Origin: Haplodiscus bocki
Lineage: Eukaryota
Reading direction: 5' to 3'
Length of the DNA: 64,000 nt
Assembly: GCA_965655095.1 (NCBI GenBank)
Contig: OZ296652.1
Coordinates: 10,912,001-10,976,000 of the forward strand
Part shown: one piece after another, positions 3,940 through 64,000 of the stretch
Layout of the letters: each line of letters begins with the position of its first letter
How positions within the stretch are numbered: the first letter of the stretch is position 1
Made by a program: the position numbers and the translations under genes
The notes under the pieces: model-generated
The model's input: only the letters and a program-made list of their open reading frames with translations
Database searches by the model: none
What the model was told of the DNA's origin: nothing

Positions 3940-3949
3940 TTATTTTTAA

Positions 3950-3982
<33 letters not shown>
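3940..3982 (-). repeat. (TAA)n microsatellite 3' tail of the LINE
   Basis: (TAT)n run on + strand, ~50 bp beyond the ORF2 stop. Confidence 0.85.
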
Positions 3983-3983
<1 letters not shown>

Positions 3984-4030
3984 ATGGATTTGGTTATGGG
4001 AGTGATCCCATTGAATGTTTAAGTCAATAA

Positions 4031-9587: not shown

Positions 9588-11822
9588 TTTGTTTTGTTGA
9601 AATTGAAACTTATGTGCCTGCTGAATAGGACCATGAAATTTTAATACGAAATAGTTTACTGGATTTTATACAAGTTTGTTATATAAAAAACATCCTCTGT
9701 TCAAGTTTAAAGCCTAAGCTAAAAACGGTACCAACTTCAAATCGAAATCGAGATTAATTAACCCAGACAATTTTGTGGAATTCGGCAAAGATGAAAAAAA
9801 AATCAAAGTTGAATTTCTCCACAATTACACATTTCTGGGAGATAAATTAGAGCGCTTTTGAAAGGTATTTTATGGAACTTTCATTTTTGTTTGGTGAGTG
9901 TTTTCACCGGGGGCTCTTCTCCAGATGGGTGCGTAATAATTTAGGGTTATCGTCTGATACGCGGCAAGCATTTGGAGAAAAATGTCTTGTGCTACAGAGT
10001 GAATTTGGAAGCAAAAACCGGCATGTTTAATTGACGGGCATAACGGTCCAGCTCCGAACATTAATTCTGTTTGAGTTAGACAAAATGAGAACAGAATGTG
10101 AGAAATCTGACGTGCTAAAGAATATTGGTTTGTGGAAAATTCATTCAGAAGTTAAAAATAAGTAGGCTGTGTTTAAGCAACGGTATGTCAAATAGGGTTA
10201 AGATCACGTTGAACTTCTCCGAACGAAAATACAGAGAGAACAACCTATGCAGCTGGGCATTCATGTGACTTTGGATAAACAGTCGTGCCAACGCAATGAT
10301 AGAACCTGGGAGCGAACTTTTCTGGGTCTTTGACCTGAGGTCTCTATAAGAATGATAGCATCTGTGCATGAATACATGTATCGAGCTTTCCTTATTGTCG
10401 TAAAATTTTGTGAGTTAATCGTAAAAGTAATTAATCCTACAACGAAAAATAGTAATTCTCTTAGTGTAAGCACGCAGGAATACTTGGGGTTTCATAATTC
10501 TCATTTATTTTCTAACAGCGGTGTATCGAAAATCGATGAATTTTTTGGAATGTTCTTCAAATTTCCGCTTCCAAATGCTTCCATTTGTAAAACTTGGATT
10601 CATGTGTTGTTGGCATGAAGAGTACAATAATCTCTGGATTGTCAAATTTTGGCTGTTGTCCGATTATTTAATCACAAGGAGGAAGCCGTTGACTGCAGTG
10701 CTTTGAAAATTCATCCTTCTCCCCTCTTTCCTCCCGGAGCCTTTCGACCGAATCGCTGTACTTTGAACTCATGAAGTATGGGAAAACTAGTATACGGATT
10801 TCTATAGCTTTTAGAGGCACTAGCGAGCAGCAAAATGTAACAACGACTTCGGACACAGGAAAGGAAGTTACCCAAACTCTAAATAGTTAGTCAACGATGG
10901 GCGTGCTGCTCAACTGAAAGCATTATATCTTATCTCAGGCAGTGCTTGTCTGGTTTCGCGTGCAGCAACAAGACGACTGATTCACATGTTTTCCGGCAGA
11001 GGCACTTAATTATATCTCGTAACCTCAAGCACTTTGCTCTGAGGAAAAAAGTTTTCATGGAACCCTACAAGTAGTATAGGTTGGGGAGGGGTTACAGAAC
11101 ACTTTCGTGCTCCCTACAGTATTATAGCAATTCGATGTTCCTATTCTATCTCTGTGGAACCATTTCACGGTCACAGTGTTTATTTTCATTTCTCCTTGAT
11201 ATTGTATTACAAATGAAATACTGTGTGAATACTTAATGTTTATATAGCCGCTACATAAGCCATAAAGATATTCTTTGTGATTGCAGTTCATTTATTTTCC
11301 TTCATACGCTATTCTACCTAATACAGTTGAGCTATTAAACGGTGCTGTTACCCAGATGAGCTGTATATATAATCGATTAGTTTCATTTCAAATCAATGGT
11401 TCCTGTAGTCTCGTGGTTTATTCCACTGGGATTTCATGTAAGTCGCGAATTCTGGACTAGATGGTTTTGCGCGGTAGAACTGGCGCGTTTCCTAAGCAAA
11501 ATTGGAAGGGATTTTGAACTTCTGAATTTTTCTGCCTGTTTCATTTTCGCATCCATTGAGCCTTATTCTCGAATTTCAGCTCCGAAACTAAATTGAAATT
11601 CAACTCTTTGCATTTCAGAGGATCAAAACCAACCGATGTCATAAAATACTACTTTTGTTCTCATTACTTTTTCGCAATCCCTTTTCAGTTCAACGGCTCT
11701 TCTCTCAATTTTTCAACAATAACTTTTACTAATTCGAATTTTCTCGCCAGAAAAAGACAGTTTTATCTCATAAATTAATATTCGGTATTTTTGAAATGAA
11801 ATGAGATGTTATGTATAGACCA

Positions 11823-12230
11823 TTAACCAACTTCAATATAATCAGAATTATAAATAGTGGAACTTCTAACAATAAATTTGATTGAATTGTTCATTCCAAG
11901 AGAGAGACGACTTCTGTCTCTGACTGCGATTGCTCGTTTCTCTGACTTGATGCGAGACAGAGGCGCTTCTTCTTCATCGGTGATGTTCTCTTCACCCGCT
12001 TCCCTCTTGCATGCATTTTTTGATATTTGTTCAGTTGAACTTGATAAACCTTGTTGCGGCTGAATATGTTGGATACGATCTAGATATCTGTTATAATCCA
12101 TGACAATTTTCATTATTTCACAGTGGTGTATCGTCATGCCCTCGCCGTCTCTTTCGAATGTCCCATTTTGTTTGTTCGTCTTGTATTTTCGCAGTGTAAT
12201 GTACACGGCCTTTCGAATGTGTACATTTGA
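11823..12230 (-). other. Open frame with a possible helix-loop-helix-like segment
   Basis: IRKAVYITLRKY...HCEIMKIVMDYNRYLDR resembles HLH helix 1/helix 2; no clear start or splice sites. Confidence 0.25.
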
Positions 12231-12391
12231 ATTATATACGTACACATACACGGAAAGCTGTATTCGTAGCTGAAACAAATATCCAAATTAAAACTTTTAA
12301 TTGCCTCGCAAACATTCGTTTCCATTGCAAATCTAACAAACATAGTTAATACATCCAGATTTCAATGAGTGGTCTTATTAATAAGTTAATA

Positions 12392-12724
12392 CTAACTTTG
12401 CTGGTTGAGAATGATTGACTCAAATCGAGAATCATTCAATAGTCCTGAATCCTCGTTCGCTCTCAGCGGCACCAAGACGTCTCGTGGGGCGATGTTGTTC
12501 CCCAGCAAGCTGAAGATTATTCTTTTCCAGTTCAGTTGGGTCAACTTTGTGGAATGTTGGCCGTTGATTACCATATCTTGCCTGCCTGTATCCGACATTT
12601 CGCCAAATTCGTCGAAACGCTTCTTCGTCAAAGCCAGATGGGCTTTTCTGGCAAACATCCGCAACCTCAGCTCTCGCGCTTCGTGCAGTATCATTGTTGA
12701 GAAGTTTTCATTGTTTTGAGCCAT
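12392..12724 (-). CDS. Hypothetical 110-aa ORF, probable Polinton accessory gene
   Basis: ATG-initiated intact ORF at the left edge of the Polinton; no recognisable motif. Confidence 0.4.
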   Translation of the reverse strand: MAQNNENFSTMILHEARELRLRMFARKAHLALTKKRFDEFGEMSDTGRQDMVINGQHSTKLTQLNWKRIIFSLLGNNIAPRDVLVPLRANEDSGLLNDSRFESIILNQQS

Positions 12725-12954
12725 GGCGATTATGAACCAGAAATTTTAAAAAATTATGGGAAGAAATTAGATGTCTATTTGATGCCTAAGCTAGTTTGAG
12801 AATTACTTGTTGAGTTTTCCCTTCGATTCCCTTTCGATAACTCCCTGCTGTTAGATAAAACTTATCGCCGGCTGACCACCGACTTTTACTGTCATACCAT
12901 GGATGTTTTGAAGGTAAGACTATTGATGTTGGGGAAAAGTTCCATTGTATTGAT

Positions 12955-13450
12955 AGCTATCCAATTAATTAGTGCCTTCTTGTGTGAAAAGTGTCGGTAA
13001 TAAATTTGGTCTCTCGCTTTTTTGGGACATTGCCCTGATGAGTAGAGGTCCTTTGGCTTGACGGGCTAGTCATTAGGTAAATGATAACATAAAACCTTAC
13101 TCAATTCAATTGGTCCCAAACTTTCAATACTTACTGTATCTTCAAGTCCAAACTTGGAGAGTATTTTAGACATCTCAACTATCGAAGAATTTTGTTGGCA
13201 TGGAAACGCAGATAAAATGATAAGTCCATCTACGTTGCTTTCATGTTTCCACCCCTGGTGAAAATGGTTTAGAAATGTTTCCATCCCAACTGGTACTGTT
13301 TTCAGCAACAATATCAGCTGTTCGATAATCTCCTTTTTGGTTGGCATGTTAGATCTTTCCAAAAAATGCCGCTCTTTAACGATTATTTAAGGATTCGACA
13401 CAAAACGACAACTTTATAAACAAGTCCGACTGATCCACGAAAAAACCCGA
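12955..13450 (-). pseudogene. Polinton accessory gene, possible DEDD-type exonuclease-like protein
   Basis: Remnants IIVKERHF, FLNHFHQGWKHE and C-terminal CPK...RHFSHKKALINW resemble the exonuclease-like ORF of invertebrate Polintons; divergent from pPolB. Confidence 0.4.
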
Positions 13451-13588
13451 TCCCTTGCAACTTCGAATCTGAGCACTGTCATCAAATGTTTACGCGTTTC
13501 AACAATCTTTTCAGATATTTGCGCCCATTTCAGAAGTTTTCCAACTTCCAATGTAAAGTTTAAGCTCAGCTTTTAGTTCGCAATCATC

Positions 13589-16500
13589 ATGAATTATCAT
13601 AATGATTTTTTTCATCTGGAGTTGGAAACTGAAGACGTCCACGGCGCTCCATTTAGAACTCCGGTATTTTTACTTCATGAAAGCGCTGTTATGAATTCTT
13701 TTTTCCAAGTTTTTCGCATAGCCATCGCAGAAGATCTTGTTGATCCTTTCGCCTTTTTGCTGGATAAAAAGGATCATCTGAAAACTTAGGTGAAAAAATT
13801 CAGATGTAGGGACATTCGAGAGAGGGTTTATGCCTCCAAGTGCAATTGATGAAACCCGTCGATCAACAAAGTGTTACTCGGTAATTCAATTCTAGCCTAT
13901 TGCGTGTTTTTGGCATATTTGATGATGATTGGTTTGAAACTATTGAGCCAGTAGTTTTCCAAATCAATATTTTTTGCGCAAGTGGATCTGGATAGGTAGT
14001 GCAGAAGCTGATTAATGTTGACTTGAAAATTGGCGAAGGCAGAGCCGTCTCATATATTCCAACACCTCCGAAGGTGGAGAATTTGAAAAAATTTTTTACT
14101 GAATATCAAAAACGTTTACGATGACTTTTGTTTCATCTACTGTGTTGCTGCAGCCTTGTTCACTCACAGTGACACATAATCGATGCCGTGCAAGTAATTA
14201 CTCGAGCCGTCTGCCTGAACTTATATTCCATCCGGACAACATGCCTATGAAAATCGAGCACATTCCTGAATTTTAGCAGGATATTAATCTCCCTCACAGT
14301 GCTCCACTACCGAGAAGATGGCGTTCTCACAACATGCTATTGGAGGAAGAGGAAAATGTTCGGAAGAAGATCAACCTTGTGCTGTTGACTAACGCAGAAA
14401 CGTCTCACTATTGTCTCGTCACCAACATTCAGATTTTCATGCACAAAATGTGTACTTCCTATTAGAGGAGCATGAAGGAAAATAGAACGAAAGTTTGTGC
14501 GAACTGCAAGCAGTCCGTGTTGAGGAAAATTTCAACGATCACAACAGATCTTCTTCCGAGAATACACCTTTGCAAATTGAAATGCCCTCTCCGGAAACGA
14601 AATTATTTTTCTGCAATTGGCAGAAAACAGCGTTGAATCTTTACTGTGTACGCTGATTTGGAAGCACTGCTAGTCCCCGAGCAAAAAAAGCATAGGTTGG
14701 TCGACAATCGTTTACGAGAATCAGTTTGCAGCCAGTTTTGGTGCAATACTTGTTGGCTCCCGATCAAATAGTGTTGTCAAGAGTCTATCGTGGGGAGAAC
14801 AGTGTCAACAAACTGTTTGGTTGCCTCAGAAGATGGTTGAAATTTTATGATGGAGAAAATCAAAATTATCGTGATATGAAGAAAGTCTTGGGCACAAAAA
14901 AACGGGAGCAGCTTCTACGGTCCAGTGCGAAGAAATGTTGTGTATGCAAGAGCGAAATTGAAAGTGATGCGGTCATCCATTAAAATCAAGCCACAAGCGA
15001 GGTGTATGGACTCGCTCACTCGAAATGTAAATTAAAATCAAGAACCGTTAAATACTTGTCCGTTTTCCTCCACAACCTGGCTACGTATGATGCCTTTACA
15101 TCCTGAAATACCTTCACTTACGACCCAACGAAATCTTTTCAGCAATAGCACGTACCAGAGAAATTTTTATATCTTTCAGTGAAAAAATTCAAACATCGGA
15201 GTACACTACAAAACAAGGCGTCAAAAAGCCTATCTACAGTGAAATACGATTGTTGGACAATTTCCAGTTCATGTCCAAAGGACTGGATGGCCTAGCTAAA
15301 ACGATGGAATTGGGTGTCTAAAGCATTTACGATCAAATTTCAGCTATTTGGAGGACGAAAATTTTTCAAAACTTAGGGGTAAATCAGCCTTTCTTTTTTG
15401 TTATCTTGATAGTCTAACAAAATTTTCCGCCTCATTTCTTTCTTTTGGAAACGATTGGAAAAATAGTATCTCGGGTGGAATAGATGTCGATGCAAAAGAC
15501 TACGAAAGAGCGATTGAAATTTACCATCTTTTCCCCTGTACAACTTTCGAAAAGTACATGATATTTACCTGACTCCTGATGTCTACCTCGTAGCTGTTAT
15601 TTTTGAGAAGTTTCGAAATGTTTGTATGTCAATCTACAAACTTGATCCTAATCATTTTTTCTCTGGTCCCAATCTAAGTTGGGAGGCGATGTTGATCACA
15701 CCGAAAGTCGAAATCGAGTTATGTCCGGACATCGATATGCTTCTGTTCTGTGAAAATGCTATTCGCGGTGGCCTCAATGGAATAGGCGCGCTTTGGACCT
15801 TCAGCGCAAACAACAAGTATATGCAAAACTATACAGCAAAACGAGAGTCAGTGTTTGAGGCTTTCTTCGAAGTAACATCTTTGTTTGTGGGAACTACGGA
15901 GCAACCGCTTCCTCCGGGCGATTACCTTTGGAGATCTGAACTCACCCTAAATGATATTTTTTCTGCTGACCCTTTCGGTGATATTGGATCAATAGTTGAA
16001 ATAGACTTACATTATCATTCTTATCTCCATTCTCCGCACAACGATCTACCCCTCGCGCCCCAAAAACGTCAAATTATTCAGGATTGGCTGTCATCCTATG
16101 CGTTGTCTTTTGGCCTAAAACCTTCTAGTACCGCTGAACTAGTGGAAACTATTCGACAAACTGAACTATGTTTGCCATTTCCGAAATTTACAGTTTTTTG
16201 TTCAGAAAGGTTGACAGAAAAAAGCTCTCCAAAAAGTGTTACAATTCAAACAAAGCAGTTAGCTAGGAAAATAGATTTTTAAAAGCACTTCAACGAGGAA
16301 GGGCGCAACCTCAGGTTTCGAGAAAAACTAAAAATTAAAGTCCAATGCGTGTTTCGGGAAAACTATGGAGAGTCTCAGGAATCGACGCGTCATCTAGTTC
16401 GTTGTGAATGAGATGCAGGCCAAAAAGTCACCTTCAAACCCAACTTCAAGTCATTCAACATCATCAATCAAGATCTAGTATCCGTGCACCTCACAAATAC

Positions 16501-17100
16501 TTCCATTGTATGGAACAAACTTACGCCAGCTGGAGCTTCAATTTTGGATTCGTCAAAGCTCGTTTTATATAAATTCTACTACTGTGAAGTGAAACCCAGA
16601 TTTGGGGATTCTATGACTGTTGTTCAAAAGACACCAACTCACTACTGTATCGTATAGAAACCGATGAATTGTATGTCGATAAGAAAAACTTTGCTCATCT
16701 ACTGGACGTGTCTAAATACCCAAAGAATCACAAAAATTTTGACCCGACAAGTAAAAAAAGTTCCTTTGACAATGAAAGATGAGCTTAATGGCTTTATACT
16801 GGAAGTTGTTTGCCTCAGAACGAAGTTTTATAGTTTCAAGTTCAGTGGTGGGGTCAAGCAGTGTGCCAAAGGTGTTCAGCGCTCGGTGAAAAAGATTTTG
16901 AACCATGATTAGTTCCAACATGTTTTACACTCTCGCACTAGCATTCACAAGCAACTGACCCAGATGAGATCGTTGAATCATCAACTTTTTGCCGCTCAAG
17001 TGAAGAAGGTTGCTCTCAGTGCCTTTGATGACAAACAATTTTTACTCGACTGTGGGATAAAGTCTTTGGCGTTTGATCATTCGAGCCTCCAGCAAAAATG
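13589..17100 (+). pseudogene. Polinton pPolB with N-terminal vOTU-like and Endonuclease VII-like domains
   Basis: ASGSG*VV; DDFCFIYCVAAAL and SHYCLV (vOTU Cys/His); CCVC...HSKC (EndoVII-like); VFLHNLATYDA; LLDNFQFMSKGLDGL; LDPNHFFSGPNLSWEAML; AIRGG; FEVTSLF (decayed motif A); HNDLPLAP; KLKSNACFGKTME (motif B); KDTNSLLY (decayed motif C); MKDEL; AKGV; KVALSAFDDK. Confidence 0.93.
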
Positions 17101-17362
17101 TAATCACTTTCCCTTGCTGTTTCACCTGTTCCGTCTTGTTTAGTAACTGAAAGGCGGACAAAAGACTGTATTTAGCCTCTATTTAATCCCTTAGCCGTTT
17201 TATTTCTTTAGTTTTTCTGCCTGATATCAAGATTTTTTCAATTAACCCAACATTTTGTCACAAAACTAGCGTGCTTTCGGAAAATGAGGACGCCGACGAG
17301 AATCAAACGCTTGACGAGTATGCAGACTAACTTTTTAGCGATGATCGCAGCCTAGACTGTCC

Positions 17363-17695
17363 GTGTTCGTCAACATCGGGTGTTTCGATGCACTCAAAAT
17401 ATACAATGGACAATTACGGTTGATTTTTTTACTTCTGCATCCAAGAATCTGGTTTGGAAAAGTTTCAAATGATAATGACTCTATTGAATTTTTTTCAGCT
17501 TCAACTGAACTCGGTTTTATTCCTCGCTCTGAGGACAACACTGCGGACATGGACACATCAGAACATTGCGATTTCTATAAACTAACAGATTTTTATGAGG
17601 GTAGTGGAGATGAACAGCAGCGTCAAAACACAAACGTCAATTGTCTCTTTATTGACTTTGAAGCAATTGAAGAATCCACTACTTCTACGCGTTAA
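17363..17695 (+). CDS. Acidic hypothetical ORF between pPolB and the protease
   Basis: Open frame with acidic C-terminus ending FIDFEAIEES; start uncertain. Confidence 0.35.
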   Translation: MFVNIGCFDALKIYNGQLRLIFLLLHPRIWFGKVSNDNDSIEFFSASTELGFIPRSEDNTADMDTSEHCDFYKLTDFYEGSGDEQQRQNTNVNCLFIDFEAIEESTTSTR

Positions 17696-17774
17696 TATTA
17701 CAGCACTGGAGATTAACTAATGCTATTTCTGTGGCTCGAAAAGTTTCGAAATAATAGATTTTTTGAATTAACAG

Positions 17775-18412
17775 CTAGTTTATTTTATACAAAAGGTTAG
17801 TATTGCAGTGCTCATTGCAAAATAAAACCAAATTTATGTCCTGTAAAATCTTTAGTGGTGGAAAAACAGAAAAAAGGAAGCAATCCAAGTCGCAGTAACG
17901 TACTGATTTTTGTTCAATTTTCTGAACCCAATATTGCCCCTTGTAGAGGCAATAGGGACCACAACTGTTCGAATGTGGAGACTGGATTGGTAATCTAACG
18001 TTGCGAATTATTTCAATTTCTGTTTTTTCCGATAATTTCATCAAGTGATCAAAGAATAAATGATAGCGTTCTACGGACTGGCCCAACGGATCCCAAACAC
18101 AAAAAAAGAACACCTTGCCTCTCGACAGTTGCTCTGTTGTTGTTGTTGTTGTTGCTGGTGATCAAATAAAAGAAGCCAATGTACTCCAGCAGGTCCAGCA
18201 CTCGAGGTGTTTACAATATAAAAAGTTTGAACATGTAGAATTGAATCATGTTCGCTTTTTTCTTGTTTGTTTTGCTGCTTCGTGAAAGTTTGTCGATGTG
18301 GTGGCAAGGAGAAAAGCAATGCAAAATTTTCGGCTGACCATACTCCGCCATACTTTGCCCTCGAAGAAGCACAACACGTTTGGGCTACTTCAGCTGAGCA
18401 TATGTTATTCAT
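17775..18412 (-). pseudogene. Adenain-type cysteine protease (Polinton PRO)
   Basis: YGGVWSAENF, IVNTS, GVHWLLL (His), WDPLG (Asp), IQSPHSNSCGPYCLY (Gln, Cys); frameshift near 18110. Confidence 0.88.
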
Positions 18413-19775
18413 TGATCAGACTGTTTTTGGAAATGTTGCGCGTGGCGTCAATAAAGATTTGGCTGAAGCATTCACCAACTAAAAGGAATTCTACGGGATG
18501 AGTCAGGGCTTCTGTAAAACTCAACTTCAATGTATTACCGGCTCCTGTAAGCTCTGGAAATAAAGTGAGGGCTTTAACGGCCTCCCTTGACGAAATCAAA
18601 TCGAATACTAGAAAGTAGAGTTTTTCTTGATAATCACTCATTCATATACCGTTGCTACCTTTTATGAAACCAAGAGCACAATTTGTGTTGTAAAGCAAAC
18701 GAGTGTTGTTGGTCGTGTCAATTGGTGTTCCGGCAATTGGAACGCTATTGCCCCGCTGAATTTCAGTTTTACTCAATTGGAACATCTGGTAATGGAAAGG
18801 CGTGCATTCAATTGTTGATCCGCGAAAAAACTTGTTTCTTACCGTCCAAAGAGTTAATCTACGCACAGGTTCGATGCCGAAAATATTTTCCTTGAAAAAA
18901 CTGTTTTGTCCAGCCTGAATGACAAACTTTTTAGACTTTCAAGATATAGGCAAACCGCTGGGCTTTTTGTCAAGGCTCTTTCAATGCTGACTTTGACTGG
19001 TGACAGCATACTTTGCTGACAAACGAAAAGGCTCTTTCAATTACTACTGCATACGGTGTCTGGTTAACTCGTTTGATGTCTGCTGCTTCCCACGTTCCCA
19101 CCCTCCTGACTGCGCAGTTGTTTGGTGATCAATAAAAGCTCAAATGGAGTGTAACACCCGGCAACAAAAGCCGTTTGCAGTCCAAAAGGTCTACGTGTGG
19201 TGCTCCATAAAATTCAAGATTGAATTGTTCGCCCTTTCTGAAATCGCTCAGCTCCTTCTGTTTTGTTTCTGCATATGCCTTGTCATTCGGTTTACGCCTG
19301 TAACCTTGACAGGGGACCCACGTTAGTTTACTGGCAATGTCTGTTGTCAGTTCGGTTTCAATAAATGTTGAGTGATGATAGTTGTTGTTGCTGCTAGAAA
19401 TCAATTTCCCATTCAGGAACATCTCTACGTGTGAAAACAAAAATGTAACGTCTCGTTTGCAAATGTCAGCTCTACATCTGCTGGTTTGACTTTTTCTGTG
19501 CCATCAGGTTGGTATAGGCACACTTCTAGAGATAGGCAAATTCGGTTCAAATCAATACTGTCCTTGTTTTCTGTGGTCACAAAAAAACCCAACGTGTCCG
19601 CGGCAACCCACATGGGGAAAAACTTCTCGATCAAAAAGCCTTCGGAATTGAACAAAACACTTAGTTTCTCGAAAAAATCAAGCGCACTATGTGTCATCGG
19701 ACTGGCAATCTCTGTTGATCGACTGAATAAAGCTGGTGCATTGTTATTGTTGTTGTTGTTGCTACTCGTTGCCAC
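18405..19775 (-). pseudogene. Polinton major capsid protein (double jelly-roll, PY)
   Basis: HSALDFFEK, FSHVEMFLNGKLISSSNNNY, PHVDLLDCKRLLLPGV, KENIFG, PFHYQ, FLVFDL, LKLSFTEAL...IFIDATRNI; several frameshifts. Confidence 0.88.
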
Positions 19776-20018
19776 GGTGCCAACTCCGGTTAGTCCTTCT
19801 TATTTTTATTACACCATCCACTAAAGTTTATTTTGGATAATGTATCAGACCGACTTCTCCTGGCGGAAATCTTTTTCAGAATGACTTTTTTGCGGCAGAA
19901 CGGTGGTGGTGGGGCACGACAACATAGACTAGTGAAGATTTCACACTCGTTTAACGTTTTCTAGCCGGGGTGCCCACCCAGCCGGCCGCCCGCAGCGTTT
20001 CGCACGCTCGCCCGCCGC

Positions 20019-20370
20019 TCAGGTGGTACCGGCGACAACCACTCCGGCGCCCACCTCGGCGAGACAGCGCATCCAGGTAGCCTTGGCGTTGGTTTTGGTA
20101 GCTGAATTTTTCAAATTTTCTTGGACAGCTTTACGAGTTCTCTTCTTGCCAGAAACAATGTTCGCCGATTCGGGAACAAAGGAAGAGACCAAATATCTGC
20201 CAAACTCTTTGGTCGAGGGCAAAACATATTTTTTCATCAGAAGCATCGCCACTTGGCCCATTCGCATAGCAAGCGCACCCATTCCACCAGAGCAAAACTG
20301 TCGCGCTGGTCCGTGGAATGTTGATGGCTGTTGTTGCTGTCGAATTTGAAAATCATAATGAGCATCCATT
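20019..20370 (-). CDS. Small basic Gly-motif virion protein typical upstream of the Polinton MCP
   Basis: FHGPARQFCSGGMGALAMRMGQVAMLLMKKYV (QxGxG-like motif plus amphipathic helix), Lys/Arg-rich tail. Confidence 0.65.
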
Positions 20371-20549
20371 TGACAAATAGTAGTAGTAGTGGTAGTAGAT
20401 TCAGTAGCAGCAGCAGTAACCAGTAACACCTTTTTTGCGACTGTTTTGCTGATTAGCTTTGCGAAAGAATGATGATGATGCTGCTCTTGGTACTGACACG
20501 TTTTGGTTGGTGACGACAAAAATGGTGATGCAAGAGAGTGTTGTTTAGC

Positions 20550-21485
20550 CTAATGCTCTATGCATTGTCGGAAGTGTAAAGTAAGATTAGTCGGACCGCG
20601 ACTGAGAAACGGAACCATTTGACCAGTTTCGTTGCGAAGCGATACTGAAATAGACTCTATGCCAGACTTTACAATGCGGCGCCATTGGAAGTTGTTAAAT
20701 GTCCGATAATTCTGTTGTTGCTGGTTCCCACTAGTTGATCGTTCTGTCAGTAGAATGACTATCAGCAAGGCAGTATGCCTATCTCCCAAGATTTCATTTT
20801 GCACCAAATCGCAAATCAGAGAAACTGTGTTCCAACCACCACTGAGGTCTGTTGGAAACTTTCGCACGGTCTTTGATATAACCCGCCTATTGTTGCCCTG
20901 TTTTGTTGATTTGTCGTTTTCAGAGCAGTCAATGTATATTTTCATGCCGAAAACGTTCTGCAAGTCTTGGGATATGGTTTTCAAAAACATAAATTCTTGC
21001 TTGTTGCCTTCATAGTAAACTTTCAGAGCTTCTGATGGGGCATCCAATTTCCACGAGAGGGGAAACTTGTCGCCCACGGTTCCTACGAAAATTTTCTTGC
21101 AAATCGAATGATAAATTCGATCAACGCTAAGATAGACACCGGGTTTGATATTTGTAAAATTATCGACAAACGTCTCCTAAACAGATCGTATTGGTGGCTG
21201 GTACAATCTAATCAATCCGTAGGGCCTTTCGCTTAGATGTTTTTTCGATTTTCCGAGCTATCGCCACCGCCATAACTTTTAATTCTTCCGCTGCGAGAGG
21301 ATACTTGAACTGGCCATATGTTATGTTTTCAATTGCGGCGGGCCAGGCGTTTTGGGCCACTGCCACTTCCCAAAAACCAGATAGGTTAAGTTGTTGAGGT
21401 AAAAGAGTTGTGAACTGGGACAATGTGTTTTCGCAAAATGTGGTCATAGATGCGTTGGATACCAAATTTATAGGGAATTCCCTAA
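20550..21485 (-). pseudogene. Polinton minor capsid protein (penton, PX)
   Basis: EFPINLVSNASM...NTLSQFTTLLPQQLNLSGFWEVAV; IKPGVY; CDLVQNEILGD...LL; ESISVSLRNETGQMVPF...LTLHFR. Confidence 0.87.
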
Positions 21486-21489
21486 AATT

Positions 21490-22722
21490 CGAAACTAATT
21501 TGGAAGGGAGTCAATTCGGCTTAGTAAAATTTGCCCAGAATCAATTGATTGTTGGCGTCTTTCATGGTGTATGTGGTCGGGATCCGTGTTTGAACTGCGG
21601 CAATGGTGAACACCTCCTCGGTAAACTGAATTCGGTAACCCCGATGATTTGTTTCAAATTTTCGTTTTATTCTCACTTGCTGGCCCATTTCGTAATTGGG
21701 CTGGCGAATTGGATTGAAACACTGAAATGAAATCAAATAGAGAACATCATTTCTTCCAACGTCTTTTAGCGCTAACTTTGTGATCCGATTCACTCTGCAA
21801 TTTTTCACATATACCGATTGCTGCAAATTTTCAATATGCGTATGTGTGTTGTTTTCGAGCAGACATTTGAAATCTATTGCCCTCAAAGATCGGATGTTTT
21901 GTTCCGCAATCGCCGCTTTGGTTTCGCTATGTAATGAATACAGACCGATGTCATTTTCTTGGAAAAAATGAGAAAATTCGCCGGCGAACTCTCGAGCTTT
22001 ATCCCCCCAAATCTTTTCCGTTTTGGGAAGAGAATTTTACCTGGACCAACAAAACATTGGTTTTATCATCATCATCATTGTCTTTGAACTGACTCTTTTT
22101 GAAAGAATTGATTCCATGATTTTCCGCAACGCATCTTTACATTCTGCGCCAGTCTTTTTTTCAATGGTAACGCCCAAAAAAAGCGGCTCGGTTCGTCTGC
22201 GACAAAAATGAAATTGATTCCTTGGTTGTATCGAGACAAATTTTGCATATCTGCCAAATCAATAGACCAAAATTCATTTAATCGAAAACTCTGAACCTTC
22301 AGTCTAGGAAAGCGGTTTCTGGTTTGTTCAAATTTAGTGTAAGTCTCGCTGCGATTTAGATAATTGTGGGCTCGTCGGTAACTGCAATTCGACGCTTTCT
22401 TGAGGGCATTCCTACCGGCAAACGCAGCCGGATTGTTGCAAGATGTATGCATTGTATGTGTTTTGCTGTAGGCTAAGGACTACGCTGTGGGATTGACAAT
22501 ATTTCCTGTAACCGGACATTTTGAACAGAAAAACTCTGCGGATTTTTTGTAATCATCGATGCGTTTAAGACCACTGCAGGTAATGTGTACCCAACCACAA
22601 ATGTTGCACCATATCGAAGGTTTCTTACGTGAACCTTTCCCCAAGACCTTGGCTCAATTGCCACACTGGTATTTTGGTTTGCGTTTGACTTTTGAGTTCC
22701 CACCAATTTTTCTGTGCTTCAT
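21490..22722 (-). pseudogene. Polinton retroviral-like integrase with in-frame N-terminal PHD finger
   Basis: ATG 22722; PHD at 22665-22516; NPAAFAG, YTKF...RFPRL, WSIDLADM (D), IWGDKAREF (D), KAAIAEQ (E), GQQVRI, RGY...FTEEVF, GKFY*AEL. In-frame stops and a frameshift near 22150. Confidence 0.9.
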
Positions 22723-22759
22723 TCTTGTATCCCCGAAACAAGCAACTGTTTAAGAAAGA

Positions 22760-23462
22760 TTGCCTTGTGGTAAATGAATTTCCAACAAGTATCTGATTCG
22801 CTCAGTGTAGTTGCAGCCAGTTCATTGGAGAGCAACTTCCAGTTTCCTCTTTGTCATTGCTGTCATACGTCGTCACTTCTGTTGCTACGCACTTTGCATA
22901 TGTGTTTGCGAGTAAAAAGTTTGGCAGTTTCAACCGTCTCACTAGACCTAGCGTTCCTTCGTTCAAGTTCTCTGTGGTTCATTGTAAGTCATTCAAAAAG
23001 TCAAAAACCGTCAGACCGAGATCTTGGTTAAGAAGCATCAGTCGACCGGAGTTACCATCGATCGATACGACACTGCATTTATCAAACTTCTGAAGGATTT
23101 GCCTTGCCCGCTCAACTTTGCGTCCAGAAACTCCCGCGGACATTAAATTGCGGACTATTTTATCAGTCTTCGCTATTGTTTTGGTTCGGTCGGCAAGCTT
23201 GTCATCGGCAGTTGCGTCTTTCGGACTTTGCGCTGTAAGTCGTGAATTCAAGTTTAATTGGATGCAAAGTTTCTTGTTGTCGGTCTCGGAATAATTTTTG
23301 TCTTGCGTAATAAATTGAGAGTTCCTGATGTTTTCTGATTTTGTGCCTGGTACCAATGTGTCCTTTGATTCCGAACCCAATTGTTTTTTCGTGGTTGAAT
23401 GAATTTCTGGAGGAAGGGAGAGACGTGAATTCGTGCAACGTTATCAACACAAACTTTTTCAT
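22760..23462 (-). pseudogene. Uncharacterised Polinton ORF between ATPase and integrase
   Basis: MKKFVLI start; ILQKFD...GRLMLLNQDLGLTVFDFLNDLQ; position typical of a Polinton core ORF; frameshifted. Confidence 0.55.
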
Positions 23463-23519
23463 GCTACTGTTTGATGTCGAGTCGTTTCCTCAAATGATTG
23501 AGAACAGAAGGCTCGATGA

Positions 23520-23801
23520 CCTTCACAAGCTTGATACCATTCATGGTTGGTAGAAGTTGACGTTTTCTCCTAATCCTACTTTTTTCCTCTACAAAAGGGT
23601 TTCATTATTGGATTGATGCTTCTTCAGTTTTTTCACCGATACGTTCGCAGTCATTCTATTTCCACCATGTACAACATTAAACAGACAGTTGCAGAAAAAT
23701 TTAATTAGCTCAGTGGGACAATGTAAAAAAGAAGACTCTTTCAAAATTGGTTTAACTTTACCGGAAAGCTCAAGAGTATAAAAGTCGCGTTGACTCATCA
23801 A
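23520..23801 (-). pseudogene. Small basic Polinton protein downstream of the ATPase
   Basis: LIKFFCNCLFNVVHG...KKLKKH matches the conserved LIxxxCEC(a)LNvlxG-type small Polinton ORF. Confidence 0.65.
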
Positions 23802-23849
23802 TCAAAATCTCTCTTGTTTGAGTTATAGAGATATAAAAAAACACTAGGT

Positions 23850-24510
23850 TGGGAGCTGCTACAATTTGAACAGGGTTTCAATTTTTGGTGTGTTTGTGGA
23901 TCCAGATCTATCAATAAATGACCAAAAGGTTTTCGCGTAGTTCATTTATGGGCCTCTGAAAGGAGTTTTCTGTCCCTCAGTTATCTACCTAACACTCCAA
24001 TTTGTTCGACATCTCGAGGACTTTTGAAAAGAATCATCTGCATTACGTTGAGATCAATCGTTTTCGTATTTTTGGGGCGGGTTGGTATAAATTATGTCTC
24101 AGAGTCATCAGATGTATCTTTCGATGCCTTCCAGCAACAACCAAGTTGAAAAACATTCCATTTCACAAGCATCCTGGTGCAGGTCGTCAATAACCACGAG
24201 TGTTTTTAGCTTCTCGGCTTCGCTCCTGTCCACTGTTGCTCATTGAAGTCGTTGATAAAACTCATTTGGTAGTTTTTCTTGCGTGCATCCCAACAAAAGC
24301 GATTCGTAATCAGATTGGAAATGCTTATGAAAGTACAGAATTTTCTCGAAGCAAGGTCTGGATTTGATCTTTTGATTCAGAATTATTTGAGAAACCAGTT
24401 TAGTTTTTATGCATCCACCAGGACGATTGATCGATTTGAAGCATTGTGGATCGGTACTTTTTGTTCCTGCTTTTGGACCAGGAATGATATATCTAATGCA
24501 AGCCGATAGT
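23850..24510 (-). pseudogene. A32/FtsK-like packaging ATPase
   Basis: Decayed Walker A (INRPGGCIKTKLV), FEKILYFH, Walker B KTLVVIDDL, AGRHRKIH...HNLYQ, LFKSPRDVEQIGVLGR, KPFGHLLIDLDP. Confidence 0.88.
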
Positions 24511-24945
24511 AACGTTGGGACACCGAATTGATAGTTAGTTTGAGAACTGAAAGTCAAGAAACCAATACTGATTGAAACCAAGACAAAAATGATTGAATAG
24601 TGCAATGTCAAAAAGAAAAACGCTCTGTTGCATGTAATCCTTTTGAGGCAGCATAAGTTAGCTTCGAAAGCGGATCTCCCTTCTGCTGATCAAAAATAAC
24701 GTTTTCAATGCTGATCGAAACAGGCAAACCGTCAGTGCTGACACGCGCTGTCATAATTGTTGATCTAGGCTGGACTGATAACCCGCCAAATATGATAAAA
24801 CACTGAGAATTCGGTGAAGCCGTTGAAGTTCAGTCAGATCCAATCTGATTCGATTTCGGTTGTATCGATTTTTCGAAGTGGGAAGTGTTGCCTGCTCTAA
24901 ACAGACCACAGTTGTTTTGGGATTCACTCGAACAGTGAGGTAGTG

Positions 24946-46930: not shown

Positions 46931-47819
46931 GTGCTCAGATATATCGATAATGCATTCTGTTGCTATCCTAAACGAGCCATTGTCCCGTGTATGGAGCATA
47001 TTTTTTTTTCAATTTTGATGTGATATCTTTGGACTGCAAAATACACTGGAGCTCCGTATTACTTTGTTGCGAGCTGGCATGTTTCCGGCCGTTGCAAATT
47101 TGAAAACTATTTGGACAGTGCTGTCATTTACGTGTTTTATGATACGTCTGAGTTGAGTGAAAATTTATGAAATTTGCCCATGAAAATTCGTTCGCTCATT
47201 TCTGAGCATGAGATCTAAAGTAACTGATCTCACCTGCACCAAGTGTTACCGACAAATCTAATGCGTTAGAATCCAATAGTACCACACTTACTACGCGAAG
47301 CCAAAGACCTCCAGAAAAAGACTAACACTCTGAAGGAGACGCATGGCTACATGGGCTCATCAGACCAAAAGGATAGCTTGTCAATAGACTTTTCAAAGTC
47401 GCTGTAGTCTTTGAGAGAATTAAGCTTCAAACATTTTTCCCTCATTTTTTAGATTTTCTCGAAAAGAGATTGACCTATTAAGGGTTAAGAGGACCGGATA
47501 TATATCAGATCATCCGAAGTATACTTACTTTTAGAACTTTACATGCCATGACGCGTATCAATGAGCCCGATTATTGGTAACTTATCGCTTTTTTGAATCC
47601 GTGTGAAAAAAGATTTGATCGGTTTCAGTGGCTTCTGAAATCAGCAAATGTTTCTGTAACTATGAGACTCTTGCACGGCAACCGCAAATTTTTCGGCAAT
47701 ATGAGACAAAGAAACAAGTGAGTAAAAAAGTGATTTTTTTGTACATAAGGATTATTAGCGCCAACCAAAGCTTTCAATATGTCAAAGGCCTACGCCAAAA
47801 ATTATTTATAAGACGTAAG

Positions 47820-56589: not shown

Positions 56590-57032
56590 ACAAGACGGCC
56601 GGCTAGCACCGGCCTATATTTTTCGCCTGAATACAAATATTTCGACCAACATTTGCAAACAGTTAAAAACAAGACTACTGTTTAAAATATACTTTTCGAA
56701 GGTTTTCTACAAACGTCAACTCCACCACTGATTTCTATATTTTCTACAAAAGAAGGGGGTATCACGACGTTTCGTTCAAAATTTTTTGTCTCACAGTACC
56801 GAAAAACTTCGTGGGAATCCTTCAATGTGTCTGAAAATTTGGGGTATCGAAAAATTTTATGCTTAATAGGGGGTATCACGATTTTCCGTCGAAATTGTTT
56901 TGTCTCACAGTGCCGAAAAATTTCATAGGGGAACCCTTAAGTGTTTCATTAATTTCGTGTATCGATAAAATTTATACATAAGAGTGGGATATCACGATCT
57001 TCAGTCGAAAATTTGTTTTCTCACAGTACCGA
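56590..57032 (-). mobile_element. Truncated copy of the 43304 HINE-like element
   Basis: acaagacggccgg-ctagca-ccggcc, subTIR tatttttcgcc, three satellite units. Confidence 0.75.
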
Positions 57033-59661: not shown

Positions 59662-61090
59662 GTTTTTCTTTTAAGTGACAGACCGTGCTCTCTTTAACCG
59701 AACTTTTTACTAACCGACTATTTTAACTAATCGACACATTATATATAGGATACGTAACTAAAATGTGCAAAGCACTATCCAATGCGTTACAAAACACGAA
59801 CCGGAAATTTTTGTAGAAGCAGATACAAAATTTTCCTTCAGCTAAAGCAAATTCCAAAGTTTTTTCACTATTGCACTATTCAATTTAGCGGAGCAGCAAA
59901 AAGCCACTAAAAATTTGATAGCATTGGAAAATTCAGACCCAACAGCCGTGAAGGGGTACGGATACGAAAGTAGAAGGTTACAGACCGATAAGTTATTGGG
60001 ATACTTTAATCCCGTTGGTGGTAAGATGTTAATTAGCTAAAGCGCACTGAGGTAAATCAAGCCTCAATGTTATTACTAAAAAAAGCGGGACTAGTCGGTG
60101 CGCGGCTTTGGAAAGTACCCACTTAATTAAAACCTCTGGTGACGGTGAAAAGTCATCTGAACTTTGTACGATAGAAATCCTTGTAGTCTCTTAGTGATAA
60201 GAACGAGACGTCCAGTTTAAAAGCATGCATTAGCCGTTACTGCAGAACTTGGGGTGTCTACTGGGTTTCCGATAGAAAGATGCTACATTGGTATCTCACC
60301 GACTCTCGGCTCATGGCTTTCAATCAGCCTCTGGCGGAGCCGGACCTGAGCGGAATTTTATTTGATTGGTTTTTGTCCGGGGGTAGATTCAATTTCTCTT
60401 GTTACTCCGAAAGACTTCACTGGTTGCAGTAATGAAAAAGCCTTTGCAAACCGGTTGTTCTGACTAGATCACGACTGAATTATCACTAAAATAGCTTTAT
60501 GCTATGACCCAGGTGCTAGTTTTCCAAATCGCCGAGCAAAATCTTCATTGAAACACAACTAAATGGGCTTTTGATTGGCAAGGCCCGACAATTTCGCTTT
60601 GACTTACAAATGAACCACCCGGGAAAACGAATTTCAATCCCTCTATTTAGCAAAACAAAACCCTCATCAAATATCCGAGTTGAAGGTTACAAAATCTTGG
60701 GTTGCCAAAACTTTCCAATTAAAGACCCGTTCGAATTAATAGTACTCTCCAGCTGAACAAAACATGCTATTTTTCCAAAAAGAAAATGGTTTGGGGTTTG
60801 AAAGGATCCCTATTGGCGAAAATCGAAAATTTTGGGTTTGAAAATCATGAAGCAACACCAGAAATGCAAAGCTGACTCGTAATGGGCATAAAATTCAACG
60901 GCAATTTTTCTTCCACTGGAACTTTTTGTGCTGCTAAGTAGTTTACTAAAAATCCTTTAGACCAATACCCTTTTTGTTTCCTGTGTCTGGTTAGGAAATC
61001 TTGACCCAAATGCACCCGAGTCTCTGTGCCACAGCCTTTTCAGCCTCACTTTAAATCTGCTTTTCAATCAAATTCAAGCGGGTTGACATA

Positions 61091-61348
61091 AGTAGTGTCA
61101 GATATAGTGTTAAACAACCAAAACAAGTAAAATACCACCTTCATCTTTATATTTTCCCTCATTTTTAGCTCATTTACATAAATTTCTCCATTTCTTCATT
61201 ACTATTCATGAATATATGCCTATTTTTGTGTGTCTTGTTGAATATAAGGATGAATTTGAGGAAATATGTAAGAAAATGGAGGAAAATTGAAAAAAAATAA
61301 AGGTGTTATTTTACTTGTTTTGGTTGTTTATCTCTATCTGACACTACT
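61091..61348. mobile_element. 258-bp palindromic element with Polinton-type termini and 6-bp TSD
   Basis: GACATA|AGTAGTgtcagata ... tatctgacACTACT|GACATA; ~50-bp near-perfect TIR extending imperfectly to ~110 bp. Confidence 0.85.
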
Positions 61349-62414
61349 GACATAGTCCGGATAGAGAAAGCTCTGCGAAAACAACATATTCAATTAGAGC
61401 ATGCATACACACTTCCAGACTCAGTTTACTCAAACCTACAGTACAACACCAGACCTCTGAGCCGTTTTCTGCAGTGGCTGTCCAAGATACGAGTTTCCCA
61501 ATTCCAAATGTGCCTTAAAAAAGTCCACGATTTTCAGTTGCTTTCTTGCTAGTCGCTGACTGCTCAAGGTTGTTTCTCCTCTTTGAGTGGGTCGATTTTC
61601 ATCAAAAGTGAGCTTATTTTGGATCGCCTTGCTGTTCTAAATTGCATGTGCCATACTAAATTTTCAACAAATGTCGGGAACATCAACTAAACTTCAGTTC
61701 TTTTGACCAATTGCCTGGACGATTCAGAATTCTAATATTTGATTACTCTGTGTCTCTTTCAGAGTTTAATTAGTTTATACAGATAGACTGAGCGGATGCG
61801 AACTCAACGAAATCAAAGATTTTGTCAAGCTGGATAATATACTCAATGCCATTTTTGAAAGTCCCCCCCCCCCAATTTAGGGTTTTTTGAAAACATGGCT
61901 GAACTCAATTTTACCTTAATTGGTTGTTGTTAAATTTATGGTTTCCCAAATTTGGCGTTATTTGGCGTGATATTCGTCCAATTGGTAACAACTTTGGATG
62001 ATTTTTGGCTTGTTCACTTGTTACACTTCTCCTAATCAAAAAAACATCAAGCAAACAAATACCAATTATTTTGTCTGATATCCCTCCTTTCTTTGGGAAA
62101 AAAGATATTTGGTGTAAGATTTTTCTCTCATGCTATATACTTTGCACCACCGGAAAGTTTGAATTTTCGGTTGGAATTTTTCGTGCAAACCCCCCCACTA
62201 CACACACACGCACAAACATACTCTTTCGCATATTCCGTTTTTCTTGCAACTGAGGTTCCCACGGATCACATTGGTGAGAAAGAGCACCCTGAAAAAATGT
62301 TTCCGCGCTCTGAGAGAGTTTCTCGAGAAAATTACGATACTATATTGAATTTTTCAAAAAAAAAAGTAGAAATTCTCCAAACGTCAAAGGCCCCACCCTC
62401 GATTATTTTACGTG

Positions 62415-62444: not shown

Positions 62445-63142
62445 ACGACTTTTACCTACCATGTGGTTGAACGTGGAGGTTAAACATAGGTGTTTCAACT
62501 TGTTCTCGGCTAGCGTAAATGATAATTCCCAAGCCGTTTTGGTGAACGTGCATTCCTTGTTCTTGGAAACGCCGACGGAAAATATTTGTCCTAGTATTTT
62601 CTTTCATTTTTTTTCACGCAAGCAGCAAAATACCGGTAGTTGTTATCATATACTTTTCTAAACATAATGCTGAAGAACTGGTAATTTTTTTGATGTTGCT
62701 AAATTATTGAAGCTACGTAGATACGAAACTTTCGTTTGGAAATGCATTTGTATCCGAATGGCGATAATACATTAGTCAACGTTCAGTGATGTCCATCTTT
62801 TTGATGATTCATGGCCTAAAAAAATTTTCCGGTCTAGACTATTTCTAACTCAGTCTTTTAATGCGCTTTTTCTGCATTAGTCGAAGACCTTTTTTGACTG
62901 CTGAAACTTGTATTAAGTTTTGCTTCTCATTGAATATCCAAAAACAGCAATGACATGATTTTTTTCTCAATTGTTTGAAAGTAATCGTCAAGGAACCATT
63001 TTATATTAAAATAAAAAAAAGTGGCATATGAAAGTTTTCCACTCAGTTTTGTTTCTTTTTTTGACTGCCTATCACTTTACATGCAGATATTAGTATTTTG
63101 TATAAGAGATTTAATTATAACTTTGAATATGTTTTGTCACAG

Positions 63143-63676
63143 TCCTCCGATACCTGTGCCTCTCCCTACTCTTACCAGCTGGAAAAGTCAAGACGAGTTG
63201 AACCAACTTACCAATATCTCTTTCACCCTAACTCCAATCAGAAATCCTCTGTACAGTGACGAACAAACAGACGCCACAAAGTCTTCTAACAACTGTTTGG
63301 AGGAAGAATTGGCTAATGATCAGAACAAGTATCAGCGAAAGTACAAGAAAAGAGTCGAAACGGAATTTAGCAACTCTTTGAGAAAAGACAGATGCGCAAA
63401 TCTCTCTGTGCAATCGTTGATACACGATTCTTCTCCAGGTATTGAAGACTCGACTACCTTAGATTTTGATTTGACAGGCAGAAGTCGAAATTACCCAGAA
63501 TTTTCATCGATACTTCCGACTTCAAAAAAAGGGAGCGACCAAAATATGTACGGCCAAAGCGACGTTGATTTCCTGCTCACTTCGGAGCCAGTTGTTTCCA
63601 GACAACTTTTCCTAGATGCAATCAATGCTGACAAGAGATCTTACAATGGCGTGTCACACAAACCCAAAAATTCAAG
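63143..63676 (+). CDS. Probable exon E of the PDZ gene; gene continues beyond the window
   Basis: GTCACAG acceptor, AG|GTAAG donor; 534-nt stop-free frame (S)PPIPVPLPTL...KPKNS; phase 2 in. Confidence 0.75.
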
Positions 63677-64000
63677 GTAAGGATGCGCGGATTGACTTTT
63701 TTGTTTAGGTGTAAATGGTCAGTCAGATTGAAAAATCTGTCTGTTGTTTACTGGGAACAGGAATAAGACGTAAAATCTTTCCGGGCATAAAATTTTACAT
63801 TCTCAGGCTTAAGTGTTCCGAATAAGAAAGTGTCGTACCAGTTTATCCACATTAAGGGACTCTTGGAGTTACTTCACGATTCCAGTCTTTGAAAAAAAAC
63901 ATTAAAAGAACGGGAAAAGTTGATGGACTCGCGGGTTTACCACTCCAGGTATGACTTACTATGGCGCATCCCTACACCCGAGCCACATCATGGCCAAAAC

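What the first reader, a model, noticed from the sequence alone, without database searches (positions are those of the whole stretch)
61085..61354. MITE-sized non-autonomous Polinton-like element (258 bp)
Seen: exact 6-bp direct repeat GACATA (61085-90, 61349-54) flanking an almost wholly palindromic element that starts AGTAGT and ends ACTACT, with 14-bp and 24-bp identical TIR blocks. Known: 6-bp TSDs and 5'-AG...CT-3' termini with short reiterations are Polinton hallmarks (integrase plus protein-primed initiation). Inference: a minimal TIR-only parasite mobilised in trans by Polinton enzymes. It sits in a host intron. Its TIR does not match the candidate end of the large Polinton here, so the helper would be another family.
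Basis: partly seen in the sequence, partly recalled or inferred. Interest (0 to 1): 0.75.

Follow-up and report, generated by a model that had tools for sequence, protein, structure and literature searches.

The report
Miniature Polinton-type terminal-repeat element
A 258-base non-coding insertion has the same end motif and 6-base target duplication as Polinton/Maverick virus-like transposons, so it is probably a stripped-down hitch-hiker of one, but I found only one copy, so a mobile family is not shown.

Summary
GACATA sits at 61085-61090 and 61349-61354. It flanks a 258-bp, 27.5% G+C element (61091-61348) that starts AGTAGT and ends ACTACT, with exact 14-nt and 24-nt blocks shared by its two arms. 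No simulated window reproduced this combination (0 of 200).

The ends and the 6-bp duplication match the published hallmark of vertebrate Mavericks, 5'-(AGT)2//(ACT)2-3' with 6-bp duplications (PMC8097293). The same window holds a decayed 16,086-bp Polinton-like element (11070-27155). It has the same end hexamer, a 5/6 6-bp duplication, terminal repeats of about 108 nt and a broken protein-primed polymerase gene. The two elements share only their first 6-8 nt, so they are different families.

The Polinton-derivative reading is therefore the best one. Three points remain unproven:
- Only one copy was found, in about 172 kb of the same assembly.
- No autonomous partner was identified.
- The host-intron claim could not be tested.

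Other families with 6-bp duplications (IS3EU/GingerRoot, Ginger2) have different termini. Non-autonomous Polinton families are already catalogued, so this is a new, very small member of a known kind. Interest is moderate to low. I left out fetching other Polinton copies, because of the bar on fetching animal viruses.

The parts
61085..61090 (.). Left copy of the 6-bp target-site duplication (GACATA)
   Evidence: Read. One search confirms an exact 6/6 match with 61349-61354.
61091..61348 (.). The 258-bp non-coding element, 27.5% G+C, with ends (AGT)2 and (ACT)2
   Evidence: No ORF of 55 aa or more overlaps it.
61091..61150 (+). Left terminal inverted repeat, well-conserved part. It includes the exact 14-nt terminus 61091-61104 and the exact 24-nt block 61111-61134. 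Weaker complementarity runs to about 61185.
61289..61348 (-). Right terminal inverted repeat, well-conserved part. It includes the exact 14-nt terminus 61335-61348 and the exact 24-nt block 61307-61330. Weaker complementarity runs from about 61254.
61186..61253 (.). A+T-rich central core without significant palindromy
   Evidence: positions 96-129 of the arms: 78 of 1000 shuffles score as well. It forms the hairpin loop region.
61349..61354 (.). Right copy of the 6-bp target-site duplication (GACATA)
11070..27155 (+). Context, not part of the small element: a decayed 16,086-bp Polinton/Maverick-like element. Both ends start AGTAGT. Terminal inverted repeats are about 108 nt. The flanking 6-mers CCTACA (11064-11069) and CTTACA (27156-27161) match at 5 of 6.
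14924..16918 (+). [quoted passage not shown] It is broken: the matched stretches fall in all three forward frames, so there are at least two frameshifts. Stops were not counted. The bounds are a minimum, because all comparators were fragments.
   Evidence: 96 relatives, the best non-self at 74% identity and E 1.5e-88, many with PF03175; outer bounds and frame count.

Best explanation
The element is a non-autonomous, repeat-only derivative of a Polinton/Maverick-type virus-like transposon. It is two imperfect terminal repeats of about 60-95 nt around a short A+T-rich core, with no genes.

Shown: the structure, the (AGT)2/(ACT)2 ends and the perfect 6-bp target duplication.

Inferred:
1. It was inserted at GACATA by a retrovirus-like (rve-type) integrase supplied by a coding Polinton of another family. 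Strand transfer staggered by 6 bp and gap repair then produced the duplication.
2. The inserted copy was made by that helper's protein-primed polymerase. The trinucleotide reiteration at each end would let the primed complex jump back to recover the terminal bases, as described for adenovirus ends.
3. The self-complementary arms let a single strand fold into a hairpin, as in the stem-loop intermediate proposed for Polinton replication.
4. It belongs to a family of such copies elsewhere in the genome.
For: - Exact 6-bp duplication and exact 14-nt termini.
- The combination was absent from 200 simulated windows.
- In a survey of vertebrate Mavericks, 5'-(AGT)2//(ACT)2-3' is the commonest end motif and comes with 6-bp duplications. 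The authors tie the reiteration to jumping back in protein-primed replication (PMC8097293). PMC5175343 gives the mechanism for adenovirus and phages.
- The 6-bp duplication is the length characteristic of Polinton among integrase-related elements (PMC10045372).
- The same window holds a 16,086-bp element with the same end hexamer, a 5/6 6-bp duplication, terminal repeats and a polymerase remnant related to PF03175 proteins. So Polintons with this end type have lived in this genome.
- Strong hairpin, z = -9.6.
- G+C is 27.5% against about 38% around it, as expected for foreign DNA.
- No small-RNA gene lies at the target, and no Rfam family reaches threshold.
- The stem-loop model of Polinton replication is summarised in PMC4046053.
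Against: - Only one copy was found: in the window, in 9.7 kb beyond it and in five further loci of the same assembly. That is about 172 kb in all, a tiny share of a genome.
- No coding element with matching repeats was found. The large element shares only its first 6-8 nt.
- No integrase domain was detected in the window's ORF pieces.
- Two other short inverted-repeat elements in locus L042 also start AGTAGTGAT but have no 6-bp flanking repeat. In this genome, then, the hexamer alone does not imply a 6-bp duplication.
- The published motif survey covers vertebrates. This genome looks like a marine invertebrate's.
- None of the papers I could search describes a Polinton derivative this small.
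Confidence: 0.55

Rival explanations
1. Collapse in place. A full-length Polinton inserted at GACATA and made the duplication. A later internal deletion removed everything except about 130 bp at each end. On this reading the element never moved as a small unit and is single-copy.
For: Only one copy was found. Published Maverick terminal repeats average about 400 bp, so a deletion keeping about 95 nt of repeat on each side is possible. The non-palindromic core could be leftover internal sequence.
Against: A single deletion would need both breakpoints within about 130 bp of the ends of an element of about 16 kb, which is a very small share of possible deletions (inference). The sampled sequence is too small to call the element single-copy. 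The decayed large element in the same window kept its 16 kb.
Confidence: 0.12
2. It is a miniature element of a cut-and-paste superfamily that also makes 6-bp (or 6-7-bp) duplications, such as IS3EU/GingerRoot, Ginger2/TDD, Dada or an undescribed family. A DDE transposase would move it by excision and reinsertion.
For: IS3EU/GingerRoot usually make 6-bp duplications. One paper reports 6-bp A+T-rich targets for Ginger2. Other AGTAGTGAT-ended short elements without 6-bp duplications exist in L042, so this end type may not be exclusive to Polintons here. Invertebrate genomes hold many unclassified families (my own knowledge).
Against: IS3EU/GingerRoot termini are TA..TA, occasionally TG..CA. Ginger2 termini follow TGTNR with target RTATAY. 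Here the termini are AG..CT and the target is GACATA, and no shift of the boundaries gives those termini with a duplication. Dada elements target small-RNA genes (my own knowledge), and none is at this site. No transposase domain turned up in the window's ORFs.
Confidence: 0.15
3. It is a non-mobile hairpin: a local inverted duplication or a structured RNA gene whose flanking repeat is a coincidence.
For: The hairpin is very stable. There are sub-threshold resemblances to long-hairpin microRNA precursor models (34.6 bits against a gathering score of 200).
Against: The exact 6-bp repeat sits precisely at the ends of the inverted repeat, and 0 of 200 simulations reproduced this. No Rfam family reaches its threshold. 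The composition differs from the flanks.
Confidence: 0.03

Closest known systems
Polinton/Maverick virus-like transposons, in particular the (AGT)2-ended vertebrate Mavericks surveyed by Barreat and Katzourakis 2021 (PMC8097293)
   Same: 6-bp target duplication, terminal inverted repeats, and the 5'-(AGT)2//(ACT)2-3' end motif.
   Different: 258 bp against 12.7-24.6 kb. It has no genes at all. The host is probably an invertebrate. No sequence similarity to a coding element beyond the first 6-8 nt has been shown.
Catalogued non-autonomous Polinton families of Repbase (names seen in papers: Polinton-1N1_DR; Polinton-N1A_NV)
   Same: Dependent derivatives of Polintons that lack part of the gene set.
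   Different: Polinton-N1A_NV still carries a capsid gene, so it is large. The size of Polinton-1N1_DR could not be checked here. The present element is reduced to the terminal repeats.
[quoted passage not shown]
   Same: A few hundred bp, non-coding, A+T-rich, terminal inverted repeats, hairpin-forming, flanked by a target duplication, dependent on enzymes supplied in trans.
   Different: The duplication length and termini point to an integrase-type insertion. The presumed helper copies its DNA with its own protein-primed polymerase rather than by excision (inference).
IS3EU/GingerRoot and Ginger2/TDD DNA transposons
   Same: Integrase-related transposases. IS3EU/GingerRoot make 6-bp duplications, and one report gives 6-bp targets for Ginger2.
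   Different: Their termini are TA..TA or TG..CA, and TGTNR, against AG..CT here. The Ginger2 target RTATAY differs from GACATA here.

Membership tests
Polinton/Maverick (as a non-autonomous derivative) | 6-bp target-site duplication | tested here: met
   GACATA on both sides, 6 of 6.
Polinton/Maverick (as a non-autonomous derivative) | Terminal inverted repeats ending in a short reiterated motif, (AGT)2//(ACT)2 or (AG)3//(CT)3 | tested here: met
   AGTAGT at 61091-61096 and ACTACT at 61343-61348, with an exact 14-nt repeat. The motif definition comes from PMC8097293, a survey of vertebrates only.
Polinton/Maverick (as a non-autonomous derivative) | Terminal repeats homologous to those of a coding element with protein-primed polymerase and integrase | tested here: not met
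   Within the window, the only Polinton-like element shares just 6-8 terminal nt. A genome-wide test was not possible, and fetching other copies was left out (see referred steps).
Polinton/Maverick (as a non-autonomous derivative) | Several copies at different sites, each with its own 6-bp duplication | tested here: inconclusive
   One copy in about 172 kb of the same assembly. None in the metagenome or prokaryote genome collections.
Polinton/Maverick (the large element 11070-27155) | [quoted passage not shown] | tested here: met
   A broken remnant. Its longest open piece has 96 relatives, many carrying PF03175. Direct Pfam scans of the pieces were negative.
Polinton/Maverick (the large element 11070-27155) | Retrovirus-like (rve) integrase gene | tested here: inconclusive
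   No rve match among 75 ORF pieces of 50 aa or more. The element is heavily decayed, so absence is not shown.
Polinton/Maverick (the large element 11070-27155) | Size 12.7-24.6 kb, terminal repeats of 46-1447 bp, 6-bp duplication, (AGT)2 ends | tested here: met
   16,086 bp, repeats of about 108 nt, flanks matching 5 of 6, AGTAGT at both ends.
Polinton/Maverick (the large element 11070-27155) | Capsid, packaging ATPase and cysteine protease genes | tested here: inconclusive
   Only one weak Ulp1-type protease match, E = 0.078. Nothing else was found.
IS3EU/GingerRoot | TA..TA (occasionally TG..CA) termini with 6-bp duplication | tested here: not met
   The termini are AG..CT, and no boundary shift gives TA..TA with a flanking repeat.
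Ginger2/TDD | TGTNR termini, target RTATAY | tested here: not met
   The termini start AGTAG and the target is GACATA.
Dada | Insertion into multicopy small-RNA genes (my own knowledge) | tested here: not met
   No Rfam family reaches threshold in the window. Only sub-threshold hairpin-like matches lie inside the element itself.
MITE (structural class) | Under about 800 bp, non-coding, terminal inverted repeats, target duplication, high copy number | tested here: inconclusive
   The first four features are met. Copy number is not established.

The most novel reading that the evidence does not exclude
The element is one member of an amplified family of repeat-only mini-Polintons in an invertebrate genome. 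If so, natural copies would show that about 60-95 nt of terminal sequence, including the (AGT)2 reiteration, carries everything needed in cis for copying and integration by Polinton enzymes. They would also show that these virus-like elements support MITE-like parasites, which none of the papers I could search describes.
Probability: 0.35. Interest if true: 0.55.

Novelty: new member of a known kind. Interest (0 to 1): 0.35.

Why it matters
How Polintons/Mavericks copy and insert themselves has been inferred almost entirely from their genes and ends. A family of natural derivatives reduced to the terminal repeats would mark out, from sequence alone, which part of the ends is conserved and presumably required. 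It would also add a hyperparasite layer to a group now treated as viruses. With a single copy and no identified partner, the present case is a well-formed example and a lead, not a demonstration. It also suggests that the (AGT)2 end type with 6-bp duplications, documented for vertebrate Mavericks, occurs in what looks like a marine invertebrate genome.

Tried and rejected
- **Second copy in the window:** none, using the terminal 14-mer with up to 2 mismatches, the 22-mer with up to 3, and blastn with word size 7. A similar 14-mer at 41422 (2 mismatches) has no partner end.
- **Collection scans:** both ends at MITE spacing gave 0 hits in metagenome contigs and in genome contigs. A 20-nt block from the arms gave 39 loci. 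All are chance matches to an A-rich word, with no terminal motif and no extended similarity.
- **Sampling the source genome through LINE reverse-transcriptase relatives:** five loci from the same assembly and three from other assemblies hold no copy.
- **Paralogous empty site:** the 600-bp flanks are unique in the 194 kb I held.
- **Pfam scans of 128 ORF pieces across the window:** only the LINE reverse transcriptases were recognised. No integrase, transposase, capsid or ATPase was found.
- **Host-intron test:** the 219-aa ORF at 63021-63680 has no Pfam family and no relatives except itself, so there is no evidence either way.
- **Kapitonov and Jurka 2006** is not held in the library. Its content is cited only through later papers.
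- **Rejected on duplication length alone (my own knowledge of typical lengths):** Tc1/mariner, PIF/Harbinger, piggyBac and hAT readings. No boundary shift gives a 2-, 3-, 4- or 8-bp duplication with symmetric ends.

Full report
**Observation.** GACATA occurs at 61085-61090 and again at 61349-61354. Between the two lies a 258-bp element, 61091-61348. It starts AGTAGTGTCAGATA and ends with the exact reverse complement of those 14 nt. A 24-nt block is identical in both arms, at 61111-61134 and 61307-61330. The element is 27.5% G+C in a window of about 38%.

As single-stranded DNA it folds into one long hairpin of -52.5 kcal/mol, z = -9.6 against shuffles. The palindromy is strong in the outer 60 nt (52 of 62 columns), weaker to about position 95 and not significant in the central 70 nt or so. 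The element is therefore two imperfect terminal inverted repeats around a short core, not a complete palindrome. A 7-bp duplication is possible only if the ends are taken as asymmetric.

**Chance.** I scanned every AGTAGT...ACTACT pair 60-30000 bp apart. In the real window two pairs stand out: this element (flanks 6/6) and a 16,086-bp element (flanks 5/6). Of 200 Markov-simulated windows, one had an exact 6-bp flanking repeat and none combined that with a matching inverted repeat.

**The large neighbour.** The inverted repeats found extend outward to 11070 and 27155.
- Both ends start AGTAGT, and the repeats run for about 108 nt.
- The flanking hexamers are CCTACA and CTTACA.
- Inside, the longest open piece (218 aa) has 96 relatives. 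The best non-self relative is 74% identical, and many carry PF03175, the organellar and viral family B polymerase domain.
- Relatives map to 14924-16918 on the + strand in all three frames. The polymerase gene is therefore broken by at least two frameshifts. I did not count stops.
- Pfam found no integrase, capsid or ATPase in the pieces, only a weak Ulp1-type protease match.

Size, repeats, duplication, end motif and polymerase together make it a decayed Polinton/Maverick. The small element and this one share only their first 6 nt (left end) or 8 nt (right end), so they belong to different families.

**What is known.** Barreat and Katzourakis (PMC8097293) report the following for vertebrate Mavericks:
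- 6-bp duplications;
- terminal repeats of 46-1447 bp;
- sizes of 12.7-24.6 kb;
- conserved 6-bp end motifs, the commonest being 5'-(AGT)2//(ACT)2-3'.

They attribute the reiteration to the jumping-back step of protein-primed replication. That step is documented for adenovirus and phages in PMC5175343. PMC10045372 gives 6 bp as the characteristic duplication of Polinton among integrase-related elements. The small element meets each of these end criteria.

**Rival families.** IS3EU/GingerRoot make 6-bp duplications but end TA..TA, rarely TG..CA. Ginger2 ends follow TGTNR with target RTATAY. Neither fits. No small-RNA gene lies at the target, and no Rfam family reaches threshold. That speaks against a Dada-type insertion; the targeting habit of Dada is my own knowledge.

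**Copies.** None was found in any of these:
- the window;
- 9.7 kb beyond its end;
- five loci of the same assembly, reached through relatives of a LINE reverse transcriptase;
- three loci from other assemblies;
- the metagenome and prokaryote genome collections.

That makes one copy in about 172 kb of the same assembly. The contigs differ in read depth (25x to 82x), so they may not all come from one haplotype or organism. This neither shows nor excludes a family. The flanks are unique in the sequence I held, so no paralogous empty site exists there.

**A caveat from the sampled loci.** L042 is a host region holding the start of a polymerase zeta (REV3-like) gene. It contains two other short inverted-repeat elements that start AGTAGTGAT, at 3918-4689 and 13214-13906, with no 6-bp flanking repeat. 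The first has a 72%-identical copy in L043. In this genome, then, the hexamer alone does not guarantee a Polinton-type insertion. For the element under study it is the combination with the exact duplication that counts.

**Source.** The window corresponds to part of a 264,436-bp contig of an ENA metagenome assembly (ERZ26859043). Both reverse transcriptases in the window are of the LINE type. Their named relatives, at 30-35% identity, come from an octocoral and a bivalve. A marine invertebrate is likely but not shown. I took no contig for human.

**Mechanism.**
- Shown: structure, ends, duplication.
- Inferred from the family's established features: insertion by an rve-type integrase with a 6-bp stagger; copying by a helper's protein-primed polymerase that starts on the reiterated trinucleotide; a hairpin-forming single strand, as in the stem-loop model summarised in PMC4046053.
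- The helper must be another family than the decayed neighbour.
- The main rival is collapse in place of a full-length insertion. I rate it lower because both breakpoints of one deletion would have to fall within about 130 bp of the ends.

**Novelty.** Non-autonomous Polinton families exist in Repbase: Polinton-1N1_DR and Polinton-N1A_NV, which still has a capsid gene. None of the papers found in six full-text searches of the held library, nor those I then read, describes a repeat-only derivative of MITE size (searches; paper read). I file it as a new, extreme member of a known kind.

- I did not scan the viral collection with the terminal pattern.
- I did not look up the polymerase relatives to fetch other Polinton copies.

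1. While reasoning about the 218-aa piece and about other transposon superfamilies, I recalled from memory short motif strings: one of protein-primed polymerases and some terminal motifs of other superfamilies. The identification rests, and the family comparisons rest.
2. An earlier count gave the coordinates of the open polymerase piece I used as a query, which implicitly marks a break.

Noticed in passing
window 11070-27155: Decayed 16,086-bp Polinton/Maverick-like element with AGTAGT ends, terminal repeats of about 108 nt, a 5/6 6-bp duplication and a broken protein-primed polymerase gene. A run of ORFs of 70-175 aa on the minus strand between about 17.8 and 25.3 kb may be the remains of the morphogenesis module, but Pfam recognises none of them.
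   Followed up: partly
window 4031-6459 (-) and 30658-31935 (+): Two LINE-type retrotransposon remnants with reverse-transcriptase domains. The nearest solved structures are LINE-1 ORF2p and R2. Relatives at 74-88% identity lie on other contigs of the same assembly.
   Followed up: partly
L042 3918-4689 and 13214-13906; L043 about 14076-14812: Two further short inverted-repeat elements (772 and 693 bp) whose repeats start AGTAGTGAT but which lack a 6-bp flanking repeat. The first has a 72%-identical copy in L043. The second contains internal tandem-like repeats that also occur about 8 kb beyond the window's end. Their class is unresolved.
   Followed up: partly
window 41422-41441: A solitary stretch starting AGTAGTGTTAGAAA, 12 of 14 identical to the terminus of the small element, with no partner end in the window. 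It may be chance or an orphan end.
   Followed up: partly
window 20379-20390: Four tandem AGT units inside the large element, found by the hexamer scan.
   Followed up: no
window 40356-40393 and 43304-43341: A 38-nt inverted repeat pair (82% complementary) 2.9 kb apart, G+C-rich. It could mark the ends of another transposon.
   Followed up: no
window 43859-44117, 47686-47713, 56899-56923: A motif of about 25 nt (TTTGTCTCACAGTGCCGAAAAATTT and variants) recurs at least five times in both orientations, suggesting a dispersed or partly tandem repeat family.
   Followed up: no
window about 58812, 59877 and 59907, compared with L040: The window and the ENA record of the same contig differ by three small indels (8 bp, 9 bp and 1 bp) that cancel out in length, with no substitutions over 10.9 kb. 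The studied element is identical in both. The cause is unknown; it could be a different polishing version.
   Followed up: partly
window 63021-63680 (+): A 219-aa ORF, the longest near the element, with no Pfam family and no relatives in the 5.8-billion-protein search except itself. It is either lineage-specific coding sequence or not a gene.
   Followed up: yes
L042 1-1631 (-): The start of a large gene with polymerase zeta and delta N-terminal domains (REV3-like). This shows that the LINE-sampled contigs are host nuclear DNA.
   Followed up: partly
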